Assembly (NCBI GenBank): GCA_964106645.2
Contig: OZ067045.1
DNA: 64,000 nucleotides
Reading direction: 5' to 3' (one strand)
From: Podarcis pityusensis
Lineage: Eukaryota
In this document: piece by piece, positions 5,950 through 63,739 of the stretch
Layout of the letters: every line of letters starts with the position of its first letter
Numbering within the stretch: position 1 is the first letter of the stretch
The notes under the pieces: generated by a model
Database searches by the model: none
What the model was told of the DNA's origin: nothing
What the model saw: only the letters and a program-made list of their open reading frames with translations
Translations under genes and position numbers: made by a program

Positions 5950-7260
5950 CCACGCCAGGCGGAACGCGGCCACCTCAAGGGCCAGAGGCCACGGGCGAGT
6001 GACGCTTGCCAACCCCACTCGTAGCTCTCAGAAACGGCGGGATCGGAGAGGCAGTGGTCAGCCCGCAGTCCAGTTTGTAAGAGTAGGAAAAAAGACTAAT
6101 CCAGTGGATTAGAAAAGCAGCGCCCGGGGCTGCAGGAGGAGCCCGTCGCAGCCGTCGCCCTGTCGCAATCTTCGAACCGGAGCCCTCGAGGCGCTCTGCC
6201 GAGATGGATCTCACCCCCGCCCCACCCCATAAACGATACTACGGGAAATCGAAATAACACCAGCACAGGGAAAAGATCTGCCAGGAGACCTCGGGGGGCA
6301 ACAAAGCCGGAGGAAGAGCAGAAGAAGGGACAGCCAAAAAAAGACGCGAGCGCGCCCAGACGCCACAGAGAGGGGCTCACTTCAGACAAAATACTCGAAA
6401 TCGTGCAATCGCCTCCCCTGGCCCAGCACGCAAAGCCCCCAGTCCTCTTCCAGGTCCGGCAAAGTCATCAGACGGTATCCCCCTCTACCCGCGCGCGCCG
6501 CCGCCTTCTCACCTTGGCCCAAAACGTGTCCCCGGGGCAGGTCTCCGTCCGGCACCTCGAAGGTGAAGACTTTGGAGGTGAAGCCAGCGGAGCAAGGTTG
6601 CGTCGGGTCCGCTAGCAGAGTCCCCACCTGAGAGGGGTAAACGGAGGGACAGTCAGGCACCTGAAGCCTCAGGGAAGCGGGAAAGGGAAACGTGACCCTG
6701 TGCCCCCCTCCCCTCGAGGAACAACATCTCGCCCAAGGCACCGATGCGCCCCTCCGCTCTCCTTCCCCGGGATCTGCTGTTTACCGACACCGCCCTTCGG
6801 GGACCCGCTTAGTTAGGTACTCACCTCGAGGAGGAGAAACAAGAGGGGCCGCAGGCAGCTCCGCGGGAGCCCCATCGCCGCGACCCGAAGCTAAAGCGCC
6901 GCCGTCGGCAAAGAGAAACCTCGTCGGAGCTCCGGGCGCGTCCCGCGTTGCGTCGCCTGGAGCTGCCTGGGCTGAAGGAGGCCCCCTCGCGTCGCCCGCC
7001 TGCTTCGCCTGCTACTACCACTGCGGGGCTCCGCCCGGCCTGCCCGGCGCCTTTAAAGCCGCCGCGCCAGGTGAGGCTCCGCGGGCGGGGCTCCCGCTGC
7101 CACCGCCCCGGCCCCTCCCCGCTCGCCCGGGTCTTGCAAAGGCGGCCAGGGGGCGAGACCGGCTCCATCCCGAACGCTGCAAGGGGAGGGGGCTCTTCCC
7201 TCTCTCACACACACACATGAAACTTGGTGTCGACAGCTGTTTCGGTTACGCGGGGGGCGC
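5950..7260. promoter_or_regulatory. CpG island / promoter of the cadherin gene
   Basis: Dense CpG and high GC around exons 1-2. Upstream of the ATG lie TTTAAA (7052-7057), E-box CAGGTG (7068-7073, the Snail/ZEB-type motif known from CDH1 promoters) and GC-box-like runs (~7081-7120). Confidence 0.75.
6513..6875 (-). CDS. CDH3: Classical type-I cadherin (P/B-cadherin-like, CDH3/CDH1 clade), coding exons 1-2; rest of gene lies left of the window
   Basis: Exon 1 6875-6825 (51 nt, MGLPRSCLRPLLFLLLE, donor GTGAGT). Exon 2 6627-6513 (115 nt, VGTLLADPTQPCSAGFTSKVFTFEVPDGDLPRGHVLGQ, CAG acceptor, GTGAG donor). This matches the signal peptide and prodomain start and the 115-nt exon 2 of CDH1/CDH3. The MGLPR start and ~200-nt intron 1 favour CDH3, but CDH1 is not excluded. 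No exon 3 found in 1-6512, consistent with the known large intron 2. Confidence 0.75.
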
Positions 7261-12603: not shown

Positions 12604-12733
12604 NNNNNNNNNNNNNNNNNNNNNNNNNNNNNNNNNNNNNNNNNNNNNNNNNNNNNNNNNNNNNNNNNNNNNNNNNNNNNNNNNNNNNNNNNNNNNNNNN
12701 NNNNNNNNNNNNNNNNNNNNNNNNNNNNNNNNN
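12604..12733. other. Assembly gap (130 N)
   Basis: Run of N, flanked on the left by a CR1-type 3' tail (12547-12603, - strand). Confidence 0.99.
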
Positions 12734-16388: not shown

Positions 16389-18495
16389 ACTCAAAACGTC
16401 ATCTACTCAAAACATCATTTAACAGCAAAATTAAAGAAGGCATTAAAGTCTCCTGAAAAGCTTTATCAAAAGCGCTACCAAAGACGTCTGGTCCTGGTGC
16501 CGCCTTATGCCCCATTCGAATTCCTGAGCGATGTTGGGTCTGAGTGTACGTACCAGCTTATTTTTGCTAATGGCACGTCTTCATTGGCAGACATTGCTTG
16601 GCATATTTCGTCAGTGGCGTATCTCAAGTTCCACTGGCCTTGGGGGGCTTCTGACAAATCCTATGGCCACTTGGCCAGCAAAACCAAAGTAAACGATTTG
16701 GAATTTTGCTTGTTCTTCTACTTCCTCTTTCCTTTCATGCATCTTAACTTATAAGCCTGAGAGAAGTGACTGCTCCTTCTAAAATCTTCATAAAAATGCG
16801 GAGAAAATTGAAGGTCCAATAAATAATAACAACAATTTAATCTTTATTACACTTACACCCTGCCTTTCTTTCAATTCTTCTTCTTTATTCCATTACTATT
16901 TAAAATTATGATGACAGGAATAATAATAATACCTTACCTGTTTTGCATTGGCCTGGAGAAGTGCTTCCACCAGATCACACAGTCTGGGGTCTTTTACTTA
17001 AATACCACTCTGGTGGTCGAGGGGGGTGAATAAGTGGAGGCTGAAACCTTCCTGTATACTCACAGTGCCCTCTTGTGGTAGCCAAGGGCAGCGCTTTTGC
17101 CAACCATGTTAGCTTGAAACCAGTTTAAAGCAACAAACCTCGTTCACGAGTTGAATGGTGGGCAGCCGTTTTTTTTTGTACCGATGTGGAAAACCTCCGC
17201 TGCTGCTATCTGCACACCAGCTTGCTGTTAACAACTTCATGGAGAAATCTCTGCTATGGGGATTTAAAGAGAACGTCAAGACAAATGAGGACCAGATCCT
17301 GGTTAGTCTTTTGATATAATACAGTGGTGACCATGTGTGAGGGTCTGCTTACTCTTGCAGCACTTTCTCATGCTCCAGGAGAGCACCTTCCTCGAGGGCT
17401 GGGGTCTCGGTCACAGGAGGGTAAAAAGCCTTTACCAAGACACTTAGCCAAGAGGGCAGAGTTCCATAGGTCCAGCAGACAGAATCTGTCTAGGTCCAAC
17501 ATGCGATGCAGAAGCAAAGTCAGGAAATGGTCCACAGTCGATCACACAGGGAGTTCAGGGGAGTGGGGGCGCCAAAGGCAGGAACAAGGAGCCAGAGATT
17601 TGTGTTATTTCTGGCAACTGAAAGGCTCAAAGGGTGTATATAAGGGTCTTATATACTCTAGCCTCCTAAACCACTCTCTAACCACAAATGCTGGCAGTGA
17701 AGGAGCATCAAGGCTTTCACATTCACAAGTAGACTGGGGGCTCTGGTTCTATAAAGGCAAGCTGTATCGTTGCTCTTCAATCTGGACCAAAAGTTTTTGG
17801 CACCGGTGCTCTTGAGGACTGGGGCGGGGCAGGGGGCACTTTCACCTCCTCTGACGGCTCCAAGGGTTCTTAAGCAGGTATCTTACCAGGAGCCTCTGCC
17901 TGCTCCTCAAGGCCCTCAACCTGTGAAGCACCTGGTTTGCCTTCTGAGGAATCTATGTATGCCACAAGGTCAGGACTAGGCATGGCACTCTCCTGCTACT
18001 GTGAAAGGCGGAGTGGACAGATCCTCCTCTGTTTCTGCACAAGGAAAGTGGCTTCCTCTGTTTTCATAACAACACCCTCCTCCGCTCCATGTTTTATTGC
18101 AAATTTCTGCTCTGAATCAAAACAAAGGGGGGAAAGCCATAAAACTGAGCTCTGATATTCGAAAGAGCTTCAGAGGGTCAAGTCCTGAGAATACCTGCTC
18201 CCGAATGAACCCTTACCCTGCCAGAATAAATGAGACTTGCACAATGGAGGGCAGTGCCACCTGCAAGATATCTTCCTAGGGCACAAGCACACGCCCTTCA
18301 CTTGGTCCCACATGCTGAATCAACCGTGGCCTGCTTCCATGTGGTGTGTCAAAATACCCCAGGCCTGCCCATTTGCCCTTAACCCTTCCCCCAAAGGGAC
18401 TTGCCAGGCAGACTTTGCTCTAGCTTAGTCACCTGGGTTGCCATCCCTTTGCCAGAGTGTTGCAGAAGGCAAGGAGCAAGAGCTGAAGCAGGACA

Positions 18496-21400
18496 ATGTG
18501 CTTCTTTAGGGTCAGCCTCCTGCTCTTCCTGGTTCTTCACTCTCAGGTAGGATTGTCCTCCAAAGAGCAAGCAAAGCGGGGCAAGTATCTTTGGTGTTGT
18601 AGAAGGATCTTCTTGGCATTAATGGTGGAGGGGCTGGGTTAAGGGTTTTGTAGGTGCAGAAGAGGTACCAACACATGAACCAATTTTATCACAGCAGGCC
18701 AGGCTCTTCGTCCAACTAGTGTTTATTAGTAGCAATTCCCCAAGGCCCCAGGCAGTGATTTTGCTGTGCTGCTGAAACCAGAAATCCTTAAGGATGGCAG
18801 CGGCTGGGTTTGAATCTGGGAATTCCTGCATGCAAAGTACAGGTGCTGTCCCCCAGCTGTGTTGCCATGGCCTTGTGGAAGAGCTGGGGTGTGGGGATAA
18901 AGATGAAGAGGAGCATGAACAGAGTGTGGGGGAGATGTGACCACCGAGTGAGCATGGGAATGTTACTGGGCTGAGGAAGGTTTCATAATATTGGGCTTGT
19001 GTCTCTCTACACTGTACTCTACTGGCAGCATAGTTGTTCAAAGCAAATAGGTTTCGAGAAGATAAGAGCAGTTGCCAGTGTTCCAAACTAATGTTGAATC
19101 AGCAAACATGCATTTCCTTTAAAAACAACCACCAGGGAGCACCAACCTTTAAACTGTAAACAGGGACCTTGAATCTTCCATGGGCTGCAAAGCATCTAGC
19201 CTTGCAGAGGGATCAGATAACACAAATAAGGCTAGCCCAAGGGGTCAACAAGATGGTGGCCATGGGTGTGGGAGCTGTGGCAAGGCCTCTTGGCCCATCT
19301 CCACTCTCATCAGCTCAGCCCTTAACTACTGCTCAATAGAGGCTGCAAAACAGACTGGTTGCTACCTGCGGCAAGTCCATAGATGAAGTGAAAGGACTTC
19401 AGGTAAATAACAATAATGCAAACCCAATACTGACATTTAAGATAGAAGGAAGATACTCTTGACATAGAGGTGTGTCCAGATTCTGGGATGTGTCTTCTTT
19501 CACATGTTCCAGGATGGAATCCTAAGGTCCAGCACTGTCCTGTCCCGAGATCCCTACAAATCTTAAGGAGTGCCAAACTTGTCTTCACATAGAAGATGCC
19601 ATGGGATTGGGCTCTGAATGAGGGTTTTAAAAAAAATAATGCAACTCTCTTTCCCCCTTGTAGGTCTCCTTCCTATTTGCTTGGGCAGACGTGCTGACCT
19701 TTCCAGAATCCAGACTTGATCTGAAGAGGCAGAAAAGGGATTTGCAACTTCTGCCTCCAATATTGGTCATGGAGAATGGTATCGGTCCCTACCCCAAGCG
19801 TCTGCTGCAGGTATAGACAGAGAGGGCAACTGCCTCTTTCTCTTCATGTGCCTTGAACAGCTCAGAACCACTATGCTTGGAGGACTTCTTTTCCTCCTAT
19901 GAACCTGCTCAGAATCCCTGTGTTCTACCTCTGAGGGAGGCATAGAGGGAGGCAACAAGAAAACAGACCTTCTCAGTTTTGACATGTTCATTTGCTACCA
20001 GGTAGGTAAAGATGGCATGACTTTCTACAGTGTCACTGGGACTGGTGCAGACAGACCTCCTCAAGGCATCTTCATCTTTGAAAGAGAGACAGGCTGGCTG
20101 ATGGTGACCATGCCATTGGACAGAGAGACCAAAGACAAATACATTGTAAGTCCCTTTGTGCTAGCTTCTGCCACCCTGGAACCTCCCAGCACTTCTTAAA
20201 ACTGCCTTTGCCAACCTGGTGCCTTCCAGATCCTTTGGACTACTGCTGCCATCAGCCCAAGCATCATATAGCTGTGCTGGCTGGAGCTGATGGGACTCTT
20301 AGTTCAAAACTGCTGGAGAGCACCAGGCTGAGGAAGGCTGCTACGTGTTATGGGGCAGGGAAAGAGTGGAAATCACATGTTTGCTGCTGCTTTATGTCAG
20401 TTTTTGGGGAATCCCTGGGAAGCAATAGTATTAGCAACCATTATTTATGGGAAGGAGGAGAAAGTTCAGATTAGTTTCATTTTTGAATTCTCAGCATACA
20501 GTATCTAAATACTTTTTAGCCCCTAATGTAAATTCCTGGGTGCTCTCGGTGTGAAGAGAAGGGCAGCTCTACACTCTTGTGGGAAGGTGTCTGGGAGGGT
20601 GAGAGGCAGATTTGGGGAGTGTCTCAATTGCTACCCTGCTTGCTCTGCAGCTCTTTCTTCACGCTGTAAGTGCAACTGGGCAGCCTGTGGGGAACCGCAC
20701 AGAGATTGTCATCAAGGTGCTTGATCAGAATGACAACAAGCCCCGTTTTACCCAGAGCATCTTCCATGGCTCCGTAGCAGAAGGAGCCCCGCCAGGTACG
20801 TGTCTGTCTGTCTGGTTGCACATGCATGAACGAACTGACTGTATGGAAACCCCTAATATTTGCCTCTGAATGCCCATATCCTTTGCCCATTCTTTATGGA
20901 AGGAGAACCCACAGGGGGAGGGGGTATAATATTGTGTGCAAAACCCAGGCCCCTAACTGTGCTTCTTTCTACCTGTATGGCCTGGGCAGTCACTACTGAG
21001 CCCACCATAACTTGCAGACTGGCATAAGGGCAGTGCAGATCGCACCCAGCTGCTGCACAGTTTGCAGAGGCTAAGAGGTAATTTTGGAGCTGTCTGGGGC
21101 AGAGTCAATTTGACCTCCAAGCTGGGATGATCTGGCTATGTTGCGGGTATGTGTGTGATGCACTTCAGAAGCTGAACTTTGGACTTTTGTGGCACACACA
21201 CCCAGGTACCTTTGTGACACAAGTATCAGCCACTGACATGGATGACGCTGTGAATTCCTACAATGGGGTAATCACCTACTCCCTCGCTATCCAGACCCCC
21301 ACAAAGCCACAGAGCCAAATGTTTGCCATTGATAATAAAACAGGGGTCATCAGCTTGAACAAACCAGGACTTGACAGAACGGTAAGTGGCTGGGTCCTGG

Positions 21401-22282
21401 CTGTGTAGGGAGAGGGCATGATTAATGATGCTAAATTTCCCCTTTGAGGCAACCCTTGGCTCTGCTGCTGCGCTTTACTCCTAGTGGAAACACGGGGCCA
21501 TAAGGCACTGGTGGATTAGAGGCCAGCTGGGGGGGGGGGGGACCAAGCAGGATGGGGAGGGGCTTGCAAGGGATTTCTGAAAGAGAAGAGGGAAGGCTTT
21601 GAGTCTGGAGCAGATGAACAGCATGACTGCCGCCTTCCAGTATCTGGAGGGCTGCCCTACAGAAGATGAAGTGGACATAAGCTGTACACATTTAAAGCAC
21701 ATGGCTTCCTCCAAAGAATCCTAGGAACTGCAAGTTTGTCAAGGGTGCTGGGAATTGTAGCTCTGTGAGGGGCAAACTACATTTGCCCAAATCCTTTGGG
21801 GGAAGTCATGTGCTTTAATGGTATGGTTTGCAAGAATTAAGCATTTTCTTTTCACATTTTCCTAATAATAAGGGTGGTCTACCACAGGCATAGGCAAACT
21901 TGGCCCTCCAGATGTTTTTGGTCTACAACTCCCATGATCCCTAGCTAGCAGGACCAGTGGTCAGGGATGATGGGAACTGTAGTCCCAAAACATCTGGAGG
22001 GCCGAGTTTGCCTGTGCCTGGTCTAGCATAACAGCTGTGTCCCATTTCAGTTTGCTGTATCTGGAAGTACCCTAGTGAGTTTAAAGTTTCCTCAAGTTAC
22101 TTGGCCAGTGGGGCTCTCAGGATCTTATACAACACTGCTTTGCCATGTGGTGCTTTGATCCCCTTTGCCCAAATGCTAATGGAATTATTTGTTTACAGGT
22201 AACCCCCCAATACACTCTGATCCTGCAGGCTACAGACTGCTTAGGAGAAGGTCTTAGCGCTACAGCAACAGCAGTGATCCAA
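18496..22282 (+). CDS. Truncated E/P-cadherin-like module (signal peptide, RQKR site, EC1 and EC2 only)
   Basis: Exons equivalent to CDH1 exons 1 and 4-8: [17 protein letters not shown] / [49 protein letters not shown] / ...[35 protein letters not shown]... / LFLHAVS...[11 protein letters not shown]... (145 nt) / [14 protein letters not shown]...GLDRT (176 nt) / [28 protein letters not shown]. The 145- and 176-nt exons match the sizes and phases of CDH1 exons 6 and 7. No EC3-5, transmembrane or cytoplasmic exons found. Confidence 0.9.
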
Positions 22283-23342
22283 GTAAGGACTGGGAACTCA
22301 CAAATACTCCCGGGTAACCATGTGACTGCTCCTATATCTTCATTTTTGCTCTTGCTGAGGCATGACAGTATTGCCTATTCTCCCACAAAATGCTTGCTGC
22401 ATTTTACTCCAGTGAGAAGTCCCAAGAACTTCAAATGCATATTTTACAGGCTGAGTAGAGATGGAGATGGAACCCTCCCCCCTTGCCCTGAAATGAATTG
22501 GGCCCCTTTCTCATGTTTTCAGGGGGCACCCGGTTGAGCCTGCCCTCGTGGCACCAAAAGGGTTAAGACTTTCTGCTGAGTCATGACAGGCAGGCAGCCT
22601 GCCAGTGGAAGGCAAGAAGGAAGTGGAGTTAGAAGGGGCTGCATCAGAAATGCCCCAGAATGGATGAGAGAAACCAACTACCACAGAGGGATGGAGGAGG
22701 GAGACCCCAGGTGGTGAGAGATCCTAGGATGGTGGGTGGGCTCAGCCCAAGAGAAGGGAAAGCCTTCCTGCTTTGATGTTTCATTGGGAAACTTGGCAAG
22801 GGGGTGGGAATGTATATTTCTGGCAGCTCAAGAAAAACAAGAAGGTTGAATGCCACACTCTTGATTGTCTTGGGGAGTTTCCTGGCATGTGCCAGAAAGT
22901 AAAGGAACTCTGTGGCCAGGGATCAAATGTTTAAGAAGGCAGTGAAATAATACATGGGGCAGGAAGGAGAGCTGCCACTGTTCAGTCCCACCTTCTGGGT
23001 GGAGAGGGGTCATAACTCAGTGTTCTTAGGTTCATCCCCAACATCTCCAGATAGGGCTAGGAAGGACCTCTGTTTGAAACCCAGGAGTACTGCTCTGCCA
23101 TGCTGAAGAGCAGAGGAATGCACTTGTCAGGCAGGGCTTCTGTCAAGAGGCTGGTGTTGTAAGGCACCTGCCCAGGCCCATCCTGACACAGCCAGTGGGG
23201 ACCACTGCTGACCTTCACTGCCCCTGAACCTCCTCTGCACCTTCATTACTTGCTCACCTGCCCTCTCTGTACAAACAGTGGCAGGCACTATGTCAAGCTG
23301 CAGGGCTACAATTTGGGCAAATGAATGGGCAGTGTGGACAGC

Positions 23343-23375
<33 letters not shown>

Positions 23376-24654
23376 GGTCTGCCGAGGGCATCTTGTCTTT
23401 AACCCTCCCCCCAACAAAACCTCTCACCCAGGAGCCAGCAGAGTTTGTATTTGAACACACAGCTGGTGGATGGGTGAGAAGTGGGTGGGGTGGGGTCCGC
23501 CCTCTCTCCCCACAACCGCAACACCTCACAGAAAGCCCCCGTGCACACAGCACCTGGGAGAAAAAGCAAACATTTAAAAACAGGAAAAACTGCTGAGGGC
23601 AGCAAGAAAGAGCTTGGAAAATAAGGGCCTGCTGCTGAGGGTGGCAAGGACATCTTCCTTTGGGAATCGATGGACCTAGGAAACTGGGAGGGGGAGGAAC
23701 TCATACAGAGGCTTTTGCTCCACCCGGCTCTCCATTCTGAATCCCAGGTGGCTAGTTCAGATGAGGTCCACCACGCTTTCCTGACTGTCCACGCACTGAA
23801 CGTGCTCACCGGCCTCCCTGCCCAAGGCCTGGCCATGCACTTCTCTAAGCTGGAGGATCCCCAACGTCCGTGGGCAGAGCTCATGAGGAGGTAGGAGGGG
23901 ATGAAGGGGGACAATCTCCCTCCCTCGGTAGGGCTGGGGCCATTGCAGTTTCAGCCTCATTTATTCCGTTCCAGCAAGACAAACCCTGATGGGCGCTTGG
24001 ACAGAAACAGCCCAATGCCCAGGGAGCTGAAACCTGGCACCTATAAGCTGCGCTTTGAGACGAGGGAGTACTGGGAGCAACAAGGATACAGCAGCTTCTA
24101 CCCTTATGTGGAAGTAAGTTTGGTTCCCAGATGAAACTCACAACTGGGGGGGGGGGAGGCTCCTTCCTACAGGACTGATGATGGCAGGGACCACCACTCA
24201 CTGCCCTTTGAGGGATGTAATTCTTGGCAGGAGAAGCACAACATTGGAAAACGGGAGAAATCAGCATAAACTTCACATTATGAAGGCTGCACGCCGTGAA
24301 GTCCCTCAGAAACCTGCAGGAAGAGGCCTAGGTGGTTGGTAGGAGAGCTAGATGTTGTGCTATGGGACATCCCTGAAAGAGCACAAAGCCAGAAGTGTGC
24401 CAGAACTGGGCACTCCGGACCAGGCATTTGTGCCCCTGACAAATGTCTTCTCATGGGCTAGGCCCAGTGCAGCGAAGAAAGGATCTCAGACCAAAGAGCA
24501 CTACCAACCTCCTGCTATTCCCCCCTCCCTTGTCTTTACACATCCTCTTGCTTGTCTCTCTCTTTAGATTGTCTTCACCATCACAGAGGAAGAAAAAGTG
24601 CACATTCCCTTGCTGCTCAGCCCTTATTCCTACACCACCTACAGGGGAAGCTAG
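18496..24654 (+). CDS. Predicted chimeric secreted protein: signal peptide + short propeptide + cadherin EC1-EC2 + 5-hydroxyisourate hydrolase (transthyretin-like) domain, 371 aa
   Basis: Nine GT-AG exons join without stop or frameshift: 18496-18546, 19664-19810, 20002-20145, 20651-20795, 21206-21381, 22199-22282, 23748-23890, 23975-24113, 24568-24654 (1116 nt). The fusion junction CAA|gtaagg ... cccag|GTG is phase 0 on both sides. The junction is inferred, not transcript-proven. Confidence 0.72.
21885..22020. mobile_element. Palindromic hAT-type MITE in intron 5 of the chimeric gene
   Basis: TIRs caggcataggcaaact / agtttgcctgtgcctg; 8-bp TSD gtctacca/gtctagca. Degenerate members of the same ctccagatgttttggactacaactcccat family occur throughout the window (e.g. 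~337-440, ~20200-20340, ~34790-34925, ~45100-45225). Confidence 0.8.
23748..24654 (+). CDS. URAH: 5-hydroxyisourate hydrolase (HIUase/transthyretin-related) coding exons
   Basis: Exons 23748-23890 (…[17 protein letters not shown]…), 23975-24113 (KTNPDGRL…[10 protein letters not shown]…YW…FYPYVE) and 24568-24654 (IVFTI…[18 protein letters not shown]). The C-terminal YRGS is the HIUase signature. Lies tail-to-tail with GAS8, as URAH/URAHP does in mammals. Confidence 0.95.
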
Positions 24655-25450
24655 TGGGAGACCGGCCAGCAGGAGGGGCTGCTTCAGCAAACCGGGGTGC
24701 CTGTTCTGAGAGAGCTGGCACAGTCCAGCGGATGGAGAGCTGTGGTTACATCCACGGCCACCTCTGGCCCAAGCCTCAGGCTGGGGGCTTGGCCATGAGC
24801 AGCTGCCTCGTAGTAAATGTGAGAGTAATCTAAAGACTGATACTTGTAAGCCTCTTCTTTTAAATTGGAGATGCCATGAATTGTGTCTGGGTCCTTGACA
24901 CACGTGTGCTCTACTGATTAGGTAGGGCTCCCTCAGTTGCTGGGGAACATGAGTGGGGAGAGGGCTGCTGCACTCACATCCTGATTGTGGGCTTCCCAGA
25001 GGTATCTGCTTGGCCACTGTGGGGAACAGGATGCTGGACTAGGTAGTCCTTTAGCTTGGATCCAGAAGTCAGGCTCTTCAGAGGTTCTCACATTGGATGG
25101 TGCTTGAGTGGACACAACATGGGTGTGGAGGACTTTGGAGGCTCTAGATAAGGTGGGATTAAGTAGTTCAGGGGCTCATTAATCAAGAGGAGGATGCTTT
25201 TCAAGTCCGCAAGCTCTGCCTTGACGTGGGTGGGAAAGAAAAAGGGAGGCTTTGCAGAGACTGAAGACTGAATAGCCCACCACAGGGCCTCTTTAATACA
25301 AATGAGGGCTGGAGCAGACACAATCTCATTCCAGGGGGCTGCTCTCTCCCTCCCTCCGTCCCCTCTACGGCCACAGCAGGAGCGGGACAGAGGCTTGCTT
25401 GCACACAAGGCTTAGGCTGAAGGCATTCCAAAGTATGATGTCAGGCTGTG

Positions 25451-28400
25451 CTACGTGGGGGTTGAGACAAACCCAGCAGGGCCCTGGCCCAGCGTGTGGC
25501 CGATCACGGAGGTCTCCAGGGGCTTGAAGCCCAAATTGTCCAAAGGGATCCCAAAGGCTGTGAGCTTGGCCTCATACGTCCGCAACAAGTCATTGTGGGC
25601 CTGCAGTGGGAGGCAATTGCAGGTTGAGGAGAGGGATCAAACATCACATGCCATAACACAGCCACCTAAGGCAACTTCTCTTGTCTATGGGTAATAGCCA
25701 ACCCAATGCACCCATGGCAGTCGCGGCTGCATCCATATTTCTCCAAAAGGATGCAAGAGAGCAGGAAAAGGCCAACTAAAATGGTTGCAGGCTAGACCAT
25801 TTCAAGGAACAAATGCTTAGAACAAACTTGTTAACTTAGAAAAATGGGGCTGAAGGTGAATATGATGCAACTTGGTAGGTCAGATGGAGCAGTGGCTAGT
25901 ACAACACTTGTCAAACCCATCAGCTGTTCACTGAAATGGGTAGGCAGTGGGCATTAGAAATGACAGAGGAAGTACTTATTCACACTTCTTAGCATTAACC
26001 TATGGAACTCACTGCCACAGGACAGTGAATTCCTGCTAGCATAAATGGCTTTCAAACAAGGCATAAGTAAAAGCCAACTGCTAGGGAAAATATATTTCTT
26101 TCCTGGGTTGTGTCTAAAGAGACCTGCTCTCTACATTTTGCTCCAACAGACATTCAAGTACAATTACAGGGTTCTCCTCAGCTGGAGCTCTTACCTTGCA
26201 CACTCTGGCTAGCTCATACTGCAGATCCTTGATGGCATTGTTTTTCGAATCCAGCACATCCTGTGAAGGAAGGTTGTTCAGGTGTTAACACATCAGGCAA
26301 GTGAACTGGCCCACAAGGGGACTAGTCAAGGCCCAGCCAGAGCTTCTGGCCATTTCTTAATGGGCCACGGCAGGCCTATGAAAAGTTAGGTGCCCTTCTG
26401 CAGCACAGTCTTGTGCTTGGCTCTTTCCTTTCTCCAAATTCTGCATGCTGAAAGTCCTAATCTGTCTGTGGTTGGCTTCCGTGATTTCATTAGGCAGTGC
26501 CAACGTATTTCCAAGCCTCTCTACGGCCATGAGGTTTAGAAACCTGCTTTTACAAAATCAGGTAAAACCCGAGATTCTCATGGGTGCTGAATTTTGTATA
26601 CAGTACTGCATACCATACTTGGCATAGCAATCACAGTGGAGCACTCCATCTACAAACAGGAGCTAATGCGCCTCTTGCCTCCCTGCACAATTTCCTCTTT
26701 GTGACTCAAATTAAGGCTCATCCGCGCTGCCCGCCAGTAATGGGAGATGAGAGCTGTGGGCTGGCATTTCTGCCACCAAGCCATTTTTTGCCCTATTTGG
26801 CACAGGATCTGGTGCTACAATACCCAGGGAATCCCCTGTGGATGTGCCTCCTGCGCAAGCAGCAGCTGAAGGTAGGAATGTGGGAGGCCTGGTGGAAGGA
26901 GCAGCTGCCCCTGGGAAGAATCTCCAGTTACTGGCGCCAGCCGTGCTTGGAATGTGGAAGCCGCTAACTAAGCCCCCTTCCCAGGCAGGCCAAGTCATGG
27001 GAGATAACTCTGTTTCCATACCATCAGGCATTTCAGAGACTGGACAGGACAGGAAGCCTGAAGAGTGAGAAGGCCACAGAGGTCCCTATGATGGAGAACC
27101 TCCCTTGGCTCTTGGGCTGGAAACACAGAGAGGAGGGGCCCTGACAGTGTGATGGGCAGCCCCTGCTCCCCAGAAACAACTTGATGTGCCAGGGGAATGC
27201 TTTGAAAGCGTAGATCGCCTTGCTGTGTACCAGGGCGCTGTTAGAGAGAACCCAACCATAGCAAAGAAAGCGGGCAGCTAGGAAATCTGCAACCAGGGAA
27301 ACCCCGTGGAGTGGAACGAGTTGAGAGAAAGTTGTGTGGCAAGCAGTCCCCAAGCCACGCTTGTGTGGCTAGAAGATACTGACAGTTCCAAGTGGCCGCA
27401 GGGAGAGGAGGAGGAAGGCAAGGAACCGAGAAGGCAGCCAGGAGCTCATTTTCTCTCTCCCTTTCCATCTCCACTGGAGACTGAGCAGCAGAGCAGGAAA
27501 CACCGCCCTGGCACCAAGGGCACATTGCCGCTTCAGTTCGCACAGTTCTCATGCTGCAAAGGGGCATATGTGCTCTGTGTACTGAACGGATTCTGGGACC
27601 AGAATAAATGGCACATAGGTTCGGCAGATTTGCATGTAGAATCTCTTCCAACTCCACCAGCCAGAGGGAAAAGAAACCGAAGTCTCTGACCACTGGAACG
27701 TCCCCTTTCAATCAGGCTCCTGCAGATTTCCCCAGGCACAGCACCCTCATGCCAAGTGTATTCTCACAGCCAGAAGCACAACAGACACTTGCTGACTGCT
27801 TGTGCATTCTATGTCCCAAGAAAGCACCAAAGAGGCTCAGGTCAGATAGGAAGGAAAAGCATTCCCCAGTGGAGCAATTCACCCCACCACTGGTTCAGTC
27901 ACTGCTGAGAGGGTCCCTTCTGCCCACGGTACTGCCCATGTGACTGACTTATATAGCTGCTGCTGGAAACAAACACCTCCCAGCAGCTTCTAGTCAACCC
28001 GCGGCAACTAGAGGCCAGTTGTGTGTGTGTGCATTCAGAGCCTGCTTGGCAAATGGAAATGTTGGTACAGTGGTACCTTGGGTTATGAAAATTCGTTCCA
28101 GAGGTCCGTTCTTAACCCAAAACCGTTCTTAACCTGAGGCGCGCTTTCGCTAATGGGGCCTCCCGCTGCTGCTGTGCCGCCGGCGTGTGATTTCCATTCT
28201 CATCCTGGGGCAAAGTTCTCAACCCAAGGTACTACTTCCAGGTTAGCAGAGTTTGTAACCCAAAGCATTTGTAACCCGAGGTACTACTGTACATGCTCTG
28301 ATTGCTTGGAGGGCTGAGGCAAAGGCTTTTCATGCTTGTGGGCCTCTTGTGCACAACTAAGGGCAGCTCCTCTGAAATACTGCGCAGGCTACATTTATTA

Positions 28401-31400
28401 ATTGCCCCTGAATGAGGGGGAGTGCTCAGAGAAAAGCTAACTTCCCCTTGTCAGGTTGGGCAGAGTCTCTTATTATAGGATGGCTCCCTGCACTTGCCCA
28501 CACTTTGAGTCCCTGGCAGCTCCCTTTTAGCCAGTGCACCTTTTTCCTGTGCATTGCAAGGTTTTACCTAGATCTTGCCTAATCCATCTTGGTAATATGA
28601 AACCCAGGGACAAACGCCATCTGAAACACCAGCAAGAAGGAATCTGACCAATTGTTCTCATCTGGCTTGGGAGCTGTTTGTTTAACTGAAGGGTATTAGA
28701 AAAATATCTATAAACTTTCTCTATAATCCCCAGGGTGATTAGAAGCACAGTACCTCCAGCTTGCGGGTGACCACACTGAGAGCACCGGGATCAAGGTTGG
28801 TGGCAGCCAGGACCTCGTTGAGCTGCACCTCCTTCTTCTCCAGGATGTTGGAGAGGCCGAGAAGCTTCCGCTCCAGCAACAAGTTCTTAAAGCCAGTTTT
28901 CTGCTGCACCTCGTTAATGGCTTTGGTAAATTTCTGGTACAGGTCATCTCGCTCGTCCTGCACCTGTGCAGACAACCATCAACCCCAGAGTCAAAGAGAG
29001 CACTGCTCTGAGCCTTGGCACAGACTGGTGCTACATGAAGCCCCTAAACCAGGTATTCTGTCTGTTAATAAGGCTCTTTGGGTTTTGGTGTGTTTTGCTT
29101 GTCCACTGTGAGCACATTGGAAAGGGCTGGAGATCAGTGGTGGAGCACATGCTTGGCATACAGAATGTCCAAAGTTGCATCCCGCACATCTCCAGGGAGG
29201 GCTGGGAAAGGTGAAGCCTTGAGAGCCACTGCCAGTCAGTGCATAGACAAGACGGAGCTGCATGGACCAAGGGTCTGGCTGTGTATTTAGGCAACTGCCT
29301 ATAGTCCTAACATTCATGCGTAAAAGTCTTCTTCCAAAAATAAAAAGCCAGCTACCCAATGACAACAGCTGCCCACCCCCTCTGTCACAAACCAACACAG
29401 ATGAAAATATGTTGCAATGATTCCAAAAGTTGGGACTTTAGTGAGTCACAGAGGGAGGAGCAATGCAGAGCTCTGAGGCAGCCCCTCAGGCTGTTAGGGA
29501 AGGCAGTGGGAGCTGGAAGACAGGGCTGGTGGTGATTAGGTTTTTATCAGTTAAAATCATCCTCTTGCATTGTGCTATATGTGCATTTGTGTGTGTGCAT
29601 GTGTGTGTGTGCCATGCAAATGCCCACCCACTGCCTTGCTGTGCTCCCATATGCTGACCTTTATCAGGAAGAGTTAAGCCCCTGTTTTCAACCCCCGGCC
29701 TTGCAGCAGTCATAGAGGGCAGCTCCACAGAAGCCCCCAGCACGCTTGCTTGCCTCCTCCTCAGGAGCCAGAGAACTGAGGAATCTGCAGCAACCTCTTT
29801 CCCCCATTTCAGGAACAGAAACCGACCACCCAGCAAGGCATGGCAGAGTAGGCCATGGGCTTTAAGCAGCCTCAGGAGAGCAAGAGAATGATGCCTTTGG
29901 GGACAGAAAGGCCTCCTTTCTCTCCCAATGCACTTTGCAAGGATCTGTGGGGGAGGAGGGATGGGAGGCAGCCTGACCCAATTCTTGTTAGTAAGAGACC
30001 CCTCATTAAGATAGGACCACTGCAGCCAGTTTTCAAAGGCAGCTAATGAGGTCTCAGATCAATGCTGAATGGCACGCAAACCTGTCCCCATGTCTTAATG
30101 AGTTATACTGAAGAGAGCCCCTCCCTTCCATCCCCCTCTCTGATGGGAGCTGCCCCTATCCAGTATCGCAGTCCCCACTTCTTTAAGTCATACTGATGAC
30201 TAGACCAGCCCAGCAGTAGACATGCCGCTGTTCAGACAAACACAAAGTCCAGCTGCTCAAGCAATCCAAAAGAACCACAAAAAAATTACACAGCTAATTT
30301 GGAGATGACAGGGAATGCCCATTGCAGGCAGTTTTGGCTCAGACTTGTCCATCTGCTCTAAAGGTCTCATCAAGAAACAACCAGGACCACAGAATTCTCA
30401 AGGCCCAATGGATGGTGGGTGGGTATATAGACCTCTCTACTGGATATCTGCAGAAAATGGGCCCATACTTTTCATCCTGTCCCACAGCCCACCCATCAAA
30501 TCCAACCCTCTCCCAACTCTAAGTTCAGCCACAGCACAACAGTGATTCTTGATCCCTACCCTGATGAACCTTTGCTGCAGCACTTCATGTTCCCACTGGA
30601 GATCCTTTAATTCCTTCTCGGTGACTTTCAAACGGGCATGTGTGTGCTGGAAAGGGAAGAGAAGGAGGTTAAAGCAGCCACACACAGTTCCTAGGGCACA
30701 GAAGGGACTGATGGGTTTTGACCTCCAAACCAGACAGTGCAAAGGAGAAACTGTAAGAGTGGGAAAGTACTATGTTCCTCTATCTGCTCCACAGGGACTG
30801 GGCATCATTCAAGTCCCTCATCCTGGAAACATCAGCTCGGGGGTCTCTTGCCCCCAACTTCCAGCATGTTTCATGATCCTTATGGCCCCCTGCCTTCCTC
30901 TTCACATAGTAACTCAATTGCTCTGCAGTTGTATTTTGAATGTAGTTGAGTCTGTTTTCGATTATGGCAAAACTGTTGTGCATTCAGACACACCAACAAC
31001 TTTGGTGGAGTGTGCAGCATCAAAAAGGAACAAAACCTAAAAAGAGATCTCTGGTCGTGAGTACGTGGCTGCATGTAAAATCACGAAACTCTCATCTTGA
31101 AACACTGACAAAAATAAAAAGCAAAGTGCTGGACAACAACTAGAATGGAAGGAGCGGTAACATTTGTCTAGATTCTAAATGACCACTGTTAGCACTGAAG
31201 GACATCACAGAAAGGGTGGTGCCTGTTTCACACAGTACAAATTTCCAAACTCTGGAAATAAAGGGCACATGAGAATAGAGACAATGCAAACTGCTACCAA
31301 AAGTGGAAATAAAAATCTGTGGCATGAAAGTGGGCTGGTGCAGAAATAGCCCAGTGCTGTTCACACCAAACTAGCAGAGAGTCAGTCCTACTAAGTAACC

Positions 31401-34400
31401 CAGAGTTCATTGGCCAGGACACTCAGGAAGCAAAGGTGAATGCAGAGCCCTGGGACTCACATGCAACATGGCCTTGTCCTTTTCATAGTGCGCCAGTTTC
31501 TTCTGCAGCTCTGCCACCTCTTCACGGGCTCGTTGCAGTGGCTCCACCAGCTTTTTGTTCTGCAGCAGCACTTCAGCCATCTCCTTCTCCAGATGGTCCT
31601 CCTTCTTCTTCATCTCCTCCATCTGCTCCTGTACTCCAAGACACACACAGAGAAAGGAGGCTGTGTGTGCCTCAGGTCCTCAAAAACAGGCAGCAAGCCC
31701 CATCCCACCAGTCCTGACCACCTGTCTGGAACATGCTTCCTCAAACCTCCCATGGGACCCACCACCACCAAGGCAAAGAGAAACAACAGCTCTGAATCAC
31801 CTGAGGATAACCAAGGCTGCACCTTGACTCATTTGACCGGCCCACTGAAGTGAACAGAACAAATTTCCAAACAAACAAGGTTGCGGTTGACATATAAAAT
31901 ATAGAAACAGACTTTCTCCCCAAACCAGAATGGTTCGTTTCCCCAAATGGGAAACACATGACCTTCAACTACAACAGGGGTTGGTCCATAGTGAGATGCA
32001 CAAGAGAGGAGCTCCAGGGCTCAAGGTATCCACAATGGCAGAGCAAACAAATGCAACATGTAGTGGCTCTAAAGCAATGGCAGTACAGAAATCAGCCAAA
32101 GCAGAACAAAAAACAAAACACAGAAAGCCCAATGAACACCATCCACTTTGACCTTCCACTACCTGAATCTGGCAACAGGCTGATTTGGGGATGGTGTCGT
32201 GTGGTGCATGTCTTTTACCTTGAGGGTGTTGATAAGTGCCAGGTTATTAAGAGTGACATCGTTGTAGTAGTTCTTGATGTCGCTGAAAGCCTTCTCGTGA
32301 TTCTTCATCAGTGTGTTGATCTGTCCATTCTTTCTCTCCTCAATCTCATGGATTTCAGTCTTCCTGCGCAAGTCTAGCTCGTCGCGTAGAACCCGCATCT
32401 TCTTCTCATACTTGGCCTCGATCTCTGGGGAAGCAGCACCCAGGGCAGACTGAGTGCTCTACTAGGCAAAAAAGTGACAAGGCTATGCATGCCTCTATCT
32501 GTGGGCTGTTTCTCTATGCTGTGTGGAAGAGGAGATGGGGCAAAGTGTTCTCCAGCTCCAACAAGAGGGCGAAGCAAGACTCTAGGCTGACTGGAAAATG
32601 TTGCCACCCAAAGGTACTGGAAGTGCTCAGACTATATATAAACAACTCTGAGCAAAGGATGGGCCCATGGAGCCTGGCTTTCTAGAAAGCTCCCAGCAGA
32701 GATGGAATTCATAGAAGGCCTAGCAAATGGCACTCCTGTGCCTAGCTATTTTGACACATTTAATTTGATGAGGAGCTTAGAACTGCTGTCAAGTTCCACC
32801 TTATAATGCATGTGGCATTTCAAGGAAGCCTCAGGCCCCTCCCTCGGAATGACTGCAAAACAGACAGGAGCTGGTCTGCAAGACAGGCCCTACGCAAATC
32901 TGTGCTCCCTATCAAGCTGCTACTTAGCCTCAATTACACACAACATAGGGCGGACTCATGAGATGGGCCTTACACACCATGGCTACAAAGTCACACACAT
33001 ACACCTTCCAGAAGAGTGAGACTGTGCCATAAGGAAGCAGCTCCCTTGTCACTGCATGTGTGCAAGAAAGGGCGCCCAAGGGATGAAGTGACACTGTGGC
33101 CCACTGATCCTTGCCTGGGCACAAAGATAGCCTTCCCTTCCGAACCCAGACCCCACAGTTTTTGGTGGCGAGCCCCAGAACTGACCTTTCACCTGCCTCT
33201 CAAAGTCATTGCGCAATCGTGTTATGTCTTCTTGTTGTTTCTGCCAAGATGATGATACTGGTTAGTGACAGATGTTGCAAATACAAAGGCCTACTCCTCC
33301 TAGCTCAAAAGCAAAGCCAAGGCTGGTTTGCTCTGGAGGAACAACTGAGGTTTAAGAACCACCACTCCTCTCCTTCCCACCCGCACACCATGCACTCAAC
33401 GAAAGTTGGCCTGAGCCCAGCCCAAGAGCCAAGTCCGGCATCACTTCAGACATACCAGCCGAAGGTTCTTCACCACCATCTCATTGGACAGCTCCTGCTC
33501 CTTCAGCTCCACCTTCAAGGTGCGCATGTCCTTCCGCAGCTCCATCTCCTGGGACCGGTGATCCTTCTGGGCCAGCTTCATAGACACTGTGCTCTCTGCC
33601 TTCAGCTCTGTGATGTTGTTCTGGTGCTCGTACAGCAGGTGCTTCACCTTCTGCTTGTAAACCTGAGACAAAAGGAAGACGAGGCAGGCGTTGGCCCTCA
33701 TCGGCCAAGGTACTCTCTTTTGCAGAGGCCTGAGTAAATGAGAGGCACTTGTGGCTACTCAGGGGAAGGGGATGGAAGTCGGTTGAGGTGCCCAGCCAGG
33801 GGTGCCAGACCAACCAAGCTGGTGACCAACTCTGTCTGCAGCGCCGTGGCTCCAAGTTCATGAAGTACCAGGAACTGAAGAAGATTCAGGAACATGTGAG
33901 CCTCTATGTCTTTATGCCAAAAGAATAGACCCTTCCAATGCCGTAGCCATTTCCCCACTTTCCATCCACAACATTGTGGGGCTGGCCAAGCCAATATCTA
34001 GCTGCTCAACCACAAGTGGAGGCACCATGGGTAAATGGTTGCAGAGAGCATGTTTCACAGGCAAAAGGTCCCTAGTAAAAGGTTGTTGGGTTAGTACCAC
34101 TGGGAAATGTTTTATTTTACTTAAATACATACTCCATACAAAGCAGCTCATGTTTTTATCACTCACCTGTCAGGGATGCTTTAGCTGTGATTCCTGCACT
34201 GCAGGGGGTTGGACTATATAACCCTTGGGATTCCTTCCAGCTCTTACGATTCTGTGATCTGTGAAGTCCACAGGCTCTTACCTTGATCTCCACCTGGTGA
34301 CGCTCTTCGGCTTCCTCCATCTCACGGTCCTTGTTGCGCAGTTCAGCTTTCTTCTCATCCAGCTGCCGCCGAGTGATCTCCCAGAAGGTGTGGATCTTGT

Positions 34401-36143
34401 CTCGCTCCAGCTGGAAGTAGTTGCGTTCTTCCCGCTCACGGTCCAGCTCCTCCCGAATGCGGCCCATGTGTTCCTCCAGCTGCAAAGCCAAGAAGAGGGT
34501 CAGCCAATAGTCGGGCTGGAGCCGAGAGGAAGGACTGGGAGCCCACCATCGCCACTACTAGCATTGTGACTTTTCTGACTCAGTGAATTCCAAAGCTTTT
34601 TCTTTTTCTTTTCAAGCCAAGGCTTTCCTGTGAACTGGCATGGGAAGCATGGCTAATTCCAGAAAGGGTGCAACTGTTTCATTTCAGAATGCACGATAAA
34701 TAGGTGAATGAATTATCTGGTTAGAGAGAAGCTTGGCTCCATGAGTCTGTTGCTCTCTGGAAGTGGATAAATCAGCTTAGAATGTTTAGGGCAGTCTTTG
34801 CCAACCTGGTACCTTCCAGATGTGCTGGTTGTCATTAACCATCAGCTACACTGATGGGTTTGCTAGCTGGGGTTAATGGGAGATGCAGCCCAAAACACCT
34901 GGAAGGCATCAGGATGGTGAAGGCTGTTCCTGTGCAATATTCTCACAATACTTGTACCCAAACTGTAAAATGGAACTGTGAGCTTAGCTATACTGAAGAG
35001 GTGCCTAGTTTTGCTACCCTATGGAATGCAGAAGGGTATAGTAAGGAACAACATGGACCCCTGGCAAAATAGTGGCTTCTCCCAATGCTGGTCCTCAGTT
35101 CTGTACTGAAGTGTCAGAGGGATGGAAAGAATGGACTCTGCAACAAGCCAGCTGAAGGACTGCATGACTCACACTTGGTCTTACTCCTAGCCAGGAAGGT
35201 TGGAGATAATGAGGGTAGGCCAAGCACCCCATACATCACTCCACCCCAAAATGAGAGACACCTTGACCATTCTCTAATGTGATACAGGCCAGGGGTGGGA
35301 AACATGGGTGGCCTGCAGGGTGTTGCTGGACTACAACTCCCATCATCGTGGGGTTGCTAGGAAATGGAGTCCCCTAAATAACTCTAGGTAGATTGGTTTC
35401 CCTCTTGTTGGCAAGAAACCACTTTGCATTGTAGTTTCTATTTCCCATCCACACATTTTTAAGAATGTACCCTCTCTGTTGCCACTGCAAAGTGACCCCC
35501 TTCTCACCTGCTCTTTGGTCATGCCCTCCGGGGAGACAGCATCCACCACAGGGCTTTTTGCACCTTTCTTCTTGCCACCTTTCTTTTCTCCTTTCTTTTT
35601 GGGAGCCTGAACAAATGTGGTAGTGGGGGAGAGGACAAGAGAGGAGAAGAGAGCATCTTCAGTGTGATGGATGAAGTGGGGAGCCAAAGGAAGGAAAGAG
35701 GCTGTGAATTCATGCTCATAACCCCTTTGGGCTATGATGAAGTGCCGTTTTCTCTAGGAAGGGGATCCACGCATCCCTCCCTCTCTCCAAAGAACAAATG
35801 GGTTCTGGCTGCCTGTACCTACTTGCCTGTGCAATTGCTCCATGGCGTTGAAGAGGCACACTTGTAAAATAGGGGTTGGTGGTGGTGGTGAGAGCAGTGC
35901 TTACCAGGGCTCAAGGCTTATATCAGGGCTTACTCTTGGCACGCGTAAGGAAGAGTGACGAAGGAATGAGTGCCCCTGAGCATGTGCAGAGTTCGGTCTG
36001 TCGCTGAGCATGTCCAGCCCCCGCGCTTCCGGGGTGGAGGGTCGGGGCCTCTTGGCGGGCAGGAGCCCCAGCACCGCCCCGGTTTTGGGGGAGCCCCCCG
36101 GGGCCCCCTCATCGCAAGCGCGCCCCACTTCCGGCCTCACCAT
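25451..36143 (-). CDS. GAS8: Growth arrest-specific 8 / dynein regulatory complex subunit 4, 482 aa
   Basis: 11 coding exons with GT-AG boundaries: 36143-36141 (gccaccATG|gt), 35606-35508, 34479-34282, 33662-33456, 33240-33186, 32424-32219, 31628-31461, 30646-30560, 28963-28754, 26260-26195, 25600-25451. Motifs include [34 protein letters not shown] and [14 protein letters not shown]. Confidence 0.97.
28068..28289. mobile_element. Tc1/mariner (Tigger-like) MITE in a GAS8 intron
   Basis: TIRs cagtggtaccttgggtta / taacccgaggtactactg flanked by a TA duplication. Confidence 0.8.

Positions 36144-58091: not shown

Positions 58092-63739
<5,648 letters not shown>

What the first reader, a model, noticed from the sequence alone, without database searches (positions are those of the whole stretch)
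18496..24654. Candidate chimeric gene: secreted cadherin EC1-EC2 fused to 5-hydroxyisourate hydrolase (URAH)
Seen: six cadherin-derived exons and three URAH exons lie on the same strand and join by canonical GT-AG sites into one uninterrupted 371-aa ORF: [17 protein letters not shown]|[33 protein letters not shown]…(EC1, EC2)…[12 protein letters not shown]|[22 protein letters not shown]…YSYTTYRGS*. The cadherin part has no EC3-5, transmembrane or tail exons. The URAH part has no in-frame Met within its first exon before the catalytic His. So each half looks incomplete alone, and donor 22283 and acceptor 23747 are both phase 0. By eye there is no AATAAA/ATTAAA in the 1.46-kb gap. Established: HIUase is normally a peroxisomal/cytosolic homotetramer acting after uricase; transthyretin arose from it as a secreted paralogue; sauropsids are uricotelic. 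Inference: a purine-catabolism enzyme was rerouted to the secretory pathway as a tetramer carrying four cadherin arms, acting either as an extracellular HIUase or as a multivalent scaffold. I know of no characterised protein with this architecture but cannot exclude an existing annotation or report.
Basis: partly seen in the sequence, partly recalled or inferred. Interest (0 to 1): 0.93.

Follow-up and report, generated by a model that had tools for sequence, protein, structure and literature searches.

The report
Ancient secreted cadherin–urate-enzyme fusion gene
This lizard gene splices a signal peptide and two cell-adhesion (cadherin) domains onto the uric-acid-pathway enzyme HIU hydrolase; the same fusion stands, filed as 'cadherin-1-like', in gene annotations from coelacanth to dogs, and I found no paper on what it does.

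Summary
The fusion is real. Nine GT-AG exons give an unbroken 371-aa frame: signal peptide, furin site, cadherin EC1-EC2, HIU hydrolase. It matches an annotated Podarcis lilfordi 'cadherin-1-like' protein. RNA-type contigs of a close relative show every junction from E1 to E8, including 22282→23748 (depth 296 against 14 in the intron).

It is neither lizard-specific nor unannotated. Cadherin+HIUase models exist in snakes, turtles, birds, carnivores, amphibians and coelacanth ('HIUase B'), next to GAS8 in all six loci fetched.

The catalytic residues and all 12 EC1-EC2 calcium ligands are kept. The EC2-EC3 calcium site has decayed in several lineages. The arms are repeatedly refreshed from each lineage's own E/B-cadherin, and the Podarcis arm has lost Trp2.

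Most likely it is a secreted HIUase tetramer with four rigid cadherin arms that clears extracellular hydroxyisourate. The main rival is a non-catalytic tetravalent cadherin ligand. Secretion, assembly and activity are untested. I found no paper describing the architecture; the coelacanth paper was unreadable. This scan had not noted it on other DNA.

The parts
18496..18546 (+). E1: ATG and hydrophobic signal-peptide exon (17 aa)
   Evidence: hydropathy; spliced to E2 in run X15; a 15-17-aa hydrophobic exon at the same place in snake, pigeon and fox
19340..19402 (+). optional 63-nt cassette exon (21 aa, in frame)
   Evidence: P. muralis isoform X1 maps here; joints in X15 at depth 61
19664..19810 (+). 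E2: end of signal peptide, short pro-segment, furin site RQKR, start of EC1 (Trp2 absent)
   Evidence: spliced in X15
20002..20145 (+). E3: cadherin EC1
   Evidence: Pfam Cadherin
20651..20795 (+). E4: end of EC1, DQNDN calcium linker, start of EC2
21206..21381 (+). E5: cadherin EC2
   Evidence: Pfam Cadherin
22199..22282 (+). E6: last strands of EC2, cut by an internal phase-0 donor before the EC2-EC3 linker
   Evidence: donor identical in P. raffonei; joint to 23748 in X15
22559..22584 (.). conserved element upstream of the internal first exon, containing a perfect NRF2/ARE-type motif (22574-22584); candidate internal promoter element
   Evidence: 22 of 25 nt shared with the gopher snake locus; motif kept in P. 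raffonei and Zootoca, variant in snake; motif is not unique in the window, so a lead only
22660..22713 (+). internal first coding exon of the plain HIUase isoform (donors after 22710, 22713 or 22731; all phase 0; no PTS2)
   Evidence: Lacerta agilis isoforms X1/X2 map here, with viper and Pogona counterparts; 97% identical in Zootoca against 83% for the whole intron; a contig of run X17 covers 22692 and E7-E8 (inferred tables); the fox exon at this position encodes a PTS2
23748..23890 (+). E7: first HIUase-domain exon, shared by both isoforms; catalytic His264
23975..24113 (+). E8: HIUase, catalytic Arg304
24568..24654 (+). E9: HIUase, His355, C-terminal YRGS and stop
   Evidence: E9 letters follow 24113 in a contig of run X20

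Best explanation
This is the single orthologous URAH (HIU hydrolase) gene, with two starts. An internal first exon gives the plain intracellular enzyme, without a peroxisomal signal in squamates. An upstream cadherin-derived start gives signal peptide - furin site - EC1 - EC2 - HIUase. Shown: the exon structure, the spliced fusion transcript in a close relative, conservation across lobe-finned vertebrates, purifying selection on both halves, intact catalytic residues and EC1-EC2 calcium ligands (about 0.93 that this is a selected, expressed isoform). Inferred: the protein enters the secretory path, is cut after RQKR, and assembles through the HIUase core into a tetramer with four calcium-stiffened arms. 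The arms keep it in the extracellular space or at epithelial surfaces; in most lineages they keep Trp2 and could bind the native E/B-cadherin. There it would hydrolyse 5-hydroxyisourate made when peroxidases and oxidants attack urate outside cells.
For: Frame and splice sites. Joints E1 to E8 in X15, fusion joint at depth 296 against 14 in the intron. The same 371-aa model in three Podarcis species. Cadherin+HIUase proteins in snakes, lizards, turtles, birds, carnivores, newt, frog and coelacanth, and a 73-member Atlas cluster. Position next to GAS8 in all six fetched loci. The HIUase tree broadly follows the species tree, with short and fused forms intermixed. His264, Arg304, His355 and YRGS align with the conserved sites of zebrafish HIUase. 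dN/dS of the arm is 0.43 against P. raffonei and 0.21-0.33 at depth; HIUase 0.06 against P. raffonei. 12 of 12 EC1-EC2 ligands are kept in an arm only 63% identical to the native cadherin, while the EC2 DRE motif is intact in only 18 of 33 fusions against 26 of 26 normal cadherins. Extracellular HIU is formed by heme peroxidases and neutrophil-like cells (PMC12107670). N-terminal fusions onto a HIUase tetramer core exist in allantoin synthase (PMC13751858).
Against: There is no protein-level evidence: secretion, cleavage, tetramer and activity are untested. The HIUase exons are shared with the short isoform, so their conservation says nothing about catalysis by the fusion. Turtles keep the fusion but change catalytic positions (Arg to His/Asn, YKGS, YRES). 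The arm is labile among lacertids: it is replaced by a fresh cadherin copy in Zootoca and apparently deleted in organism D and absent from Lacerta agilis models. The Podarcis arm lacks Trp2 and the Lys/Arg14 X-dimer residue. Within Podarcis, constraint on the arm is only borderline significant (p 0.04-0.09). The fusion dominated in one of four runs only, and tissues are unknown.
Confidence: 0.5

Rival explanations
1. The fusion isoform is a non-catalytic scaffold. The HIUase tetramer only multimerises four adhesive EC1-EC2 units into a soluble, high-avidity ligand or decoy for E/B-cadherin (or for microbes and receptors that bind it). Enzyme activity matters only for the short isoform.
For: EC1-EC2 is the minimal adhesive unit. 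Trp2 is kept in most fusions and EC1-EC2 calcium ligands are 98% conserved. The arms are repeatedly homogenised with the lineage's own cadherin, as expected if they must match it. Turtles keep the fusion despite changed catalytic residues.
Against: Podarcis lost Trp2 and residue 14 yet keeps and expresses the fusion. Homogenisation can be a passive result of lying near the donor genes. Lacerta agilis models join the signal exon straight to HIUase, which keeps secretion without arms.
Confidence: 0.28
2. It is a tolerated read-through product. Partial cadherin copies are repeatedly dropped upstream of URAH by the neighbouring cadherin cluster and splice in frame because both sides are phase 0. 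The fused protein has no selected role.
For: The arms are not one clade (at least 14 label changes forced). Several sit almost on top of the same species' normal cadherin. Donor position and arm length vary. The arm is lost or replaced in close relatives. Most homologues are automatic gene models.
Against: The diverged arms of Podarcis (branch 0.7), snakes, Neoaves and carnivores stayed open-frame with dN/dS well below 1. Loss of EC2-EC3 but not EC1-EC2 ligands is selective. A dedicated short signal exon joined straight to the furin-site exon is shared by snake, lizard, turtle and pigeon. The fusion is the major form in X15.
Confidence: 0.12
3. It is a secreted small-molecule carrier in the manner of transthyretin: the former active-site channel binds a ligand rather than hydrolysing HIU.
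For: Transthyretin arose from HIUase by secretion and a few site changes (PMC4324301). Squamate HIUase domains carry lineage-specific changes next to the catalytic Arg, and turtles alter catalytic residues.
Against: The C-terminal YRGS, whose Tyr closes the channel in HIUases, is kept in Podarcis and most fusions, and the best PDB matches are HIUases, not TTR.
Confidence: 0.1

Closest known systems
Vertebrate 5-hydroxyisourate hydrolase (URAH; zebrafish 2h1x)
   Same: Same domain, His/Arg/His/YRGS active-site residues, three-exon layout of the enzyme part, position tail-to-tail with GAS8; the short isoform is an ordinary HIUase.
   Different: An extra upstream start adds signal peptide, furin site and two cadherin domains; the internal first exon has lost the PTS2 that the fox exon still encodes.
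Coelacanth '5-hydroxyisourate hydrolase B' (CCT61362.2; Forconi et al. 2014, PMID 23733620, not readable here)
   Same: Signal peptide + EC1-EC2 + HIUase in one chain.
   Different: Keeps the full cadherin prodomain. It is cited in PMC4764851 as a coelacanth-specific duplication, with tetrapods said to have one plain gene; the data here show the architecture across tetrapods.
RefSeq/GenBank 'cadherin-1-like' models (CAI5782301.1, XP_028595730, XP_053255873, XP_039186952.1, XP_005308254.1, XP_546767.3)
   Same: The Podarcis entries are this protein; the others are its orthologues.
   Different: They are automatic names with no functional work; the name hides the enzyme domain.
Type I classical cadherins (E-, B-, P-cadherin)
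   Same: Furin site, EC1-EC2 fold, EC1-EC2 calcium ligands, HAV, exon borders.
   Different: No EC3-5, transmembrane helix or catenin-binding tail; prodomain reduced to a stub; Trp2 absent in Podarcis.
Transthyretin
   Same: HIUase fold sent to the secretory path by a hydrophobic phase-0 first exon.
   Different: TTR is a separate paralogue without YRGS and without cadherin domains, and carries thyroid hormone.
Allantoin synthase (Urad-Urah fusions of plants, diatoms, bacteria)
   Same: HIUase tetramer core carrying N-terminal partner domains.
   Different: The partner is the next enzyme of the pathway, and the protein is intracellular.

Membership tests
HIUase (URAH) | Pfam HIUase/Transthyretin domain | tested here: met
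   E7, E8, E9 match PF00576
HIUase (URAH) | catalytic His, Arg, His and C-terminal YRGS | tested here: met
   His264, Arg304, His355, YRGS368-371 align with zebrafish 2h1x
HIUase (URAH) | orthologous position and descent (next to GAS8; gene tree follows species) | tested here: met
HIUase (URAH) | PTS2 peroxisomal signal in the first exon (typical of metazoan HIUase) | tested here: not met
   no PTS2-like motif in or near the gene on the + strand; internal exon lacks it while the fox counterpart has it
HIUase (URAH) | homotetramer that hydrolyses HIU | not testable with these tools
   only a monomer model was possible
Type I classical cadherin | EC1-EC2 with calcium ligands and furin-cleaved pro-segment | tested here: met
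   12 of 12 ligands, RQKR; Foldseek best matches are E-cadherin EC1-2
Type I classical cadherin | five EC repeats, transmembrane helix, catenin-binding tail | tested here: not met
   absent from model and window
Type I classical cadherin | Trp2 strand-swap anchor | tested here: not met
   mature N-terminus reads DLQLLPP in Podarcis; most other fusions keep Trp
Transthyretin | loss of YRGS with open hormone channel; separate paralogue | tested here: not met
   YRGS kept; HIUases outscore TTR in the PDB search
Secreted protein | cleavable N-terminal signal peptide, no membrane anchor | tested here: inconclusive
   hydrophobic residues 1-25, helix 4-16 in the model, similar exon in homologues; no signal-peptide predictor or experiment available

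The most novel reading that the evidence does not exclude
Bony vertebrates have kept, for over 400 million years, an overlooked secreted URAH isoform: a HIUase tetramer with cadherin arms that are continually re-copied from the animal's own E/B-cadherin, acting as a surface-tethered scavenger of urate oxidation products. Skipping the arms leaves signal peptide + HIUase (as in Lacerta agilis models), which is the architecture of transthyretin. From my own memory, mammalian TTR lies just downstream of a cadherin gene (DSG2) on the same strand. So TTR may have obtained its secretion signal from such a cadherin read-through. The TTR link was not tested here.
Probability: 0.25. Interest if true: 0.88.

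Novelty: new variant of a known kind. Interest (0 to 1): 0.7.

Why it matters
It adds an unrecognised, probably extracellular product to a well-studied metabolic gene, in species from coelacanth to dog. It contradicts the published view that the second, longer HIUase is coelacanth-specific. It may help explain why reptiles and birds keep URAH with an intact active site although liver uricase is gone. It offers a concrete, testable route by which a HIUase could become secreted, which is the step that gave rise to transthyretin. It is also a clear case of a chimeric gene whose one half evolves in concert with a neighbouring gene family. It also means that 'cadherin-1-like' and 'URAH' expression values in these species mix two different products.

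Tried and rejected
Chance in-frame adjacency of two genes: rejected by the spliced joint in X15 and by conservation.

Lizard- or sauropsid-specific innovation tied to uricotely: rejected.

'URAH half has no start of its own': rejected by the internal exon.

A single old clade of fusion arms: rejected, arms group with each lineage's normal cadherin. A single old origin of the gene arrangement is still the simplest reading, but repeated origins are not excluded.

A near-identical inverted repeat with the head-to-head neighbour: not found; only 67-81% identity in pigeon and snake.

Paper searches for cadherin with HIUase, URAH or hydroxyisourate hydrolase found only incidental co-mentions, judged from titles and abstracts. 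Forconi 2014 was not held. Raw-read run X23 barely covers the gene, so it gave no isoform counts or transcript ends. Loci for coelacanth, frog, ferret, rattlesnake, Lacerta and P. muralis were not on record, so their synteny is untested. My first exon coordinates were off by one and were corrected.
Full report
Observation. The product reads: hydrophobic N-terminus, RQKR at 39-42, cadherin EC1-EC2, then a HIUase domain from residue 250. Pfam finds Cadherin in E3, E5 and E6 and HIUase/Transthyretin in E7-E9. The gap holds no AATAAA or ATTAAA. GAS8 lies downstream on the minus strand, an M41 AAA protease further on, and the first exons of another classical cadherin lie head-to-head at about 6.5-6.9 kb. 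The joined model was translated in scripts only, to check the frame and its motifs, and was never sent to a search. Whole-protein searches and the fold used the database protein P0085. Primate and unknown-origin proteins were left out of the trees.

It is already in annotations. A search with E7 alone returned long proteins carrying cadherin repeats before the HIUase domain. Follow-up searches gave dozens: turtles of both suborders, many birds, snakes, geckos and other lizards, fox, dog, mustelids, meerkat, a newt, a frog and both coelacanths. A doubtful sturgeon model also has both domains. Most are named 'cadherin-1-like'. Podarcis lilfordi CAI5782301.1 is 371 aa and matches the window's exons at 368 of 369 residues compared; P. 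muralis and P. raffonei have 371-aa RefSeq models. The ESM Atlas has a 73-member cluster with both Pfam families. The coelacanth entry CCT61362.2 is named 'HIU hydrolase B'. PMC4764851 cites Forconi 2014 for a coelacanth-specific second HIUase gene with liver and testis isoforms and says tetrapods have a single gene; it does not mention cadherin in that passage, and I could not read the 2014 paper. An October 2026 review of the pathway's gene fusions never uses the word cadherin (PMC13751858), nor does the reptile uricase study, which reports Urah expression in reptile liver (10.1101/2023.06.02.543418).

It is transcribed. Contigs of four public runs were laid on 18400-24390. In X15 (organism C, about 98% identical in the intron; RNA by guess) every joint from E1 to E8 appears at GT..AG borders, including 22282→23748 at depth 296, with E5-E6 at 255 and the intron at 14. 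The fusion is therefore the main form there. The shorter side of that joint is 28 letters. In X17 the HIUase exons are at depth 22 and cadherin exons at about 4. The depth-22 contig has 52 letters upstream of E7 and a variant of that depth is listed at 22692, so I infer it starts in the internal exon; that joint row itself was not printed. In X20 (organism D) HIUase exons are at depth 2719 and E6 at 637, E1-E4 are practically uncovered, and a contig joins 19275 to 21125, which looks like a genomic loss of E2-E4. X23 raw reads barely touch the gene. Tissues and species are coded, so expression sites are unknown.

Two starts. N-termini of short HIUase isoforms annotated in Lacerta agilis map to 22660-22713/22731 in the gap; viper and Pogona have counterparts. 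That stretch is 97% identical in Zootoca, against 83% for the whole intron. A matching exon is readable in the gopher snake intron, and at the same position the fox has the exon with the PTS2 motif. So the lizard keeps the ancestral URAH first exon, minus its peroxisomal signal, and the fusion is an alternative upstream start of the same gene. The HIUase tree broadly follows the species tree with short and fused forms intermixed. A perfect NRF2/ARE-type motif lies 76 nt upstream of the internal ATG and is kept in three lacertids, with a variant in the snake; the 10-mer occurs three times in the window, so this is a lead only.

Age and synteny. Turtle, pigeon, gopher snake, fox, Zootoca and P. 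raffonei all have the fused gene tail-to-tail with GAS8; pigeon and snake also show a head-to-head full cadherin. Snake, turtle and pigeon share the nine-exon plan with a short hydrophobic first exon joined directly to the furin-site exon. The junction is always phase 0, but the donor differs: after VIQ in Podarcis and snakes, two codons later in turtles and most birds, and at the normal exon end in several other lizards and coelacanth. Carnivores and some others carry longer arms. Coelacanth and amphibians keep the prodomain. With coelacanth and tetrapods both carrying it, the arrangement is probably over 400 million years old (date from my own knowledge); coelacanth and amphibian synteny could not be checked.

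Selection and concerted evolution. A tree of EC1-EC2 from 33 fusions and 26 normal cadherins needs at least 14 label changes: Elgaria, Hemicordylus, three geckos, two turtles, and Zootoca each pair with a normal cadherin of the same or a close species; carnivore arms group with mammalian CDH1. In Zootoca the block 17659-21711 is replaced by a fresh copy 96% identical to P. lilfordi cadherin-1, and the old E6 is frameshifted. The Podarcis arm instead sits on a long branch (0.7) with its frame open. dN/dS is 0.43 for the arm and 0.06 for HIUase against P. raffonei, and 0.21-0.33 for arms at depth; the within-Podarcis figure for the arm is borderline (p 0.04-0.09). The sharper signal is positional. 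All 12 EC1-EC2 calcium ligands are kept in an arm only 63% identical to the native cadherin, and they are 98% conserved over all fusions. The EC2 DRE motif, which serves the missing EC2-EC3 site, has decayed separately in Podarcis, Rhineura, Neoaves, carnivores, newt and frog. That is what selection on a two-domain, calcium-stiffened arm would leave. Podarcis has lost Trp2 and the basic residue 14; most other fusions keep both.

Structure. AlphaFold2 on P0085 with 29 sequences gives mean pLDDT 78 and pTM 0.42: three beta domains with uncertain relative positions, and the last EC2 strand (241-251) runs across the junction. Foldseek's best matches are E-cadherin EC1-2 structures. His264, Arg304, His355 and YRGS align with zebrafish HIUase; turtles alter some of these.

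Mechanism. Shown: a two-start URAH gene with an expressed and selected cadherin-fused isoform. Inferred: secretion, furin cleavage and tetramer assembly through the HIUase core, as allantoin synthases show is possible with N-terminal partners (PMC13751858). HIU forms outside cells when heme peroxidases and oxidants act on urate (PMC12107670), which gives a substrate independent of uricase. I put an active extracellular HIUase positioned by its arms at 0.5, a non-catalytic tetravalent cadherin ligand at 0.28, a tolerated by-product at 0.12 and a TTR-like carrier at 0.1.

Verdict. It is a member of the HIUase family by domain, active site and orthology. It is not a classical cadherin and not a transthyretin. 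The architecture is present in public annotation but, as far as this library shows, undescribed as a conserved vertebrate protein. Novelty: new variant of a known kind. Interest 0.7.

Noticed in passing
window 6514-6875, minus strand: Signal exon (ATG 6875) and prodomain exon of a classical cadherin running away head-to-head from the fusion gene; the N-terminus resembles P-cadherin (my recall) and is only about 45% like P. lilfordi cadherin-1.
   Followed up: partly
window about 25400-36000 minus; 58800-62100 minus: GAS8 exons (Pfam GAS) and an M41 AAA-protease gene (AFG3L1-like); DBNDD1 probably lies between, as in the pigeon and snake loci.
   Followed up: partly
L002 10001-24558 (Zootoca vivipara): The cadherin arm is replaced by a recent copy of the normal cadherin (prodomain to EC3), with a 180-bp tandem array at about 18024-19101 and a frameshifted old E6 at 24476-24558.
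   Followed up: partly
window 19275-21125 in run X20; Lacerta agilis proteins P0113, P0118: Apparent genomic loss of E2-E4 in organism D; Lacerta models join the signal exon directly (or via E6) to HIUase, a transthyretin-like layout.
   Followed up: partly
turtle proteins P0016, P0034, P0041, P0042: Catalytic positions changed (Arg to His/Asn, YKGS, YRES), suggesting loss of HIUase activity in turtles while the fusion is kept.
   Followed up: no
window 22574-22584; L003 25332: Perfect ARE-type motif near the internal start in lacertids, and another in the fox URAH intron.
   Followed up: partly
window 21885-22025: A very abundant SINE in the E5-E6 intron dominates read depth in all four runs; a (GCAA)n microsatellite lies at about 23340-23375.
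   Followed up: no
protein P0074 (Leptodactylus) and P0181 (sturgeon): A frog model joins only the cadherin prodomain to HIUase; a sturgeon model flagged as unverified has several cadherin repeats before a degenerate HIUase domain, hinting at an origin before the ray-fin/lobe-fin split.
   Followed up: no
window 12604-12733: 130-base N run; left untouched.
   Followed up: no
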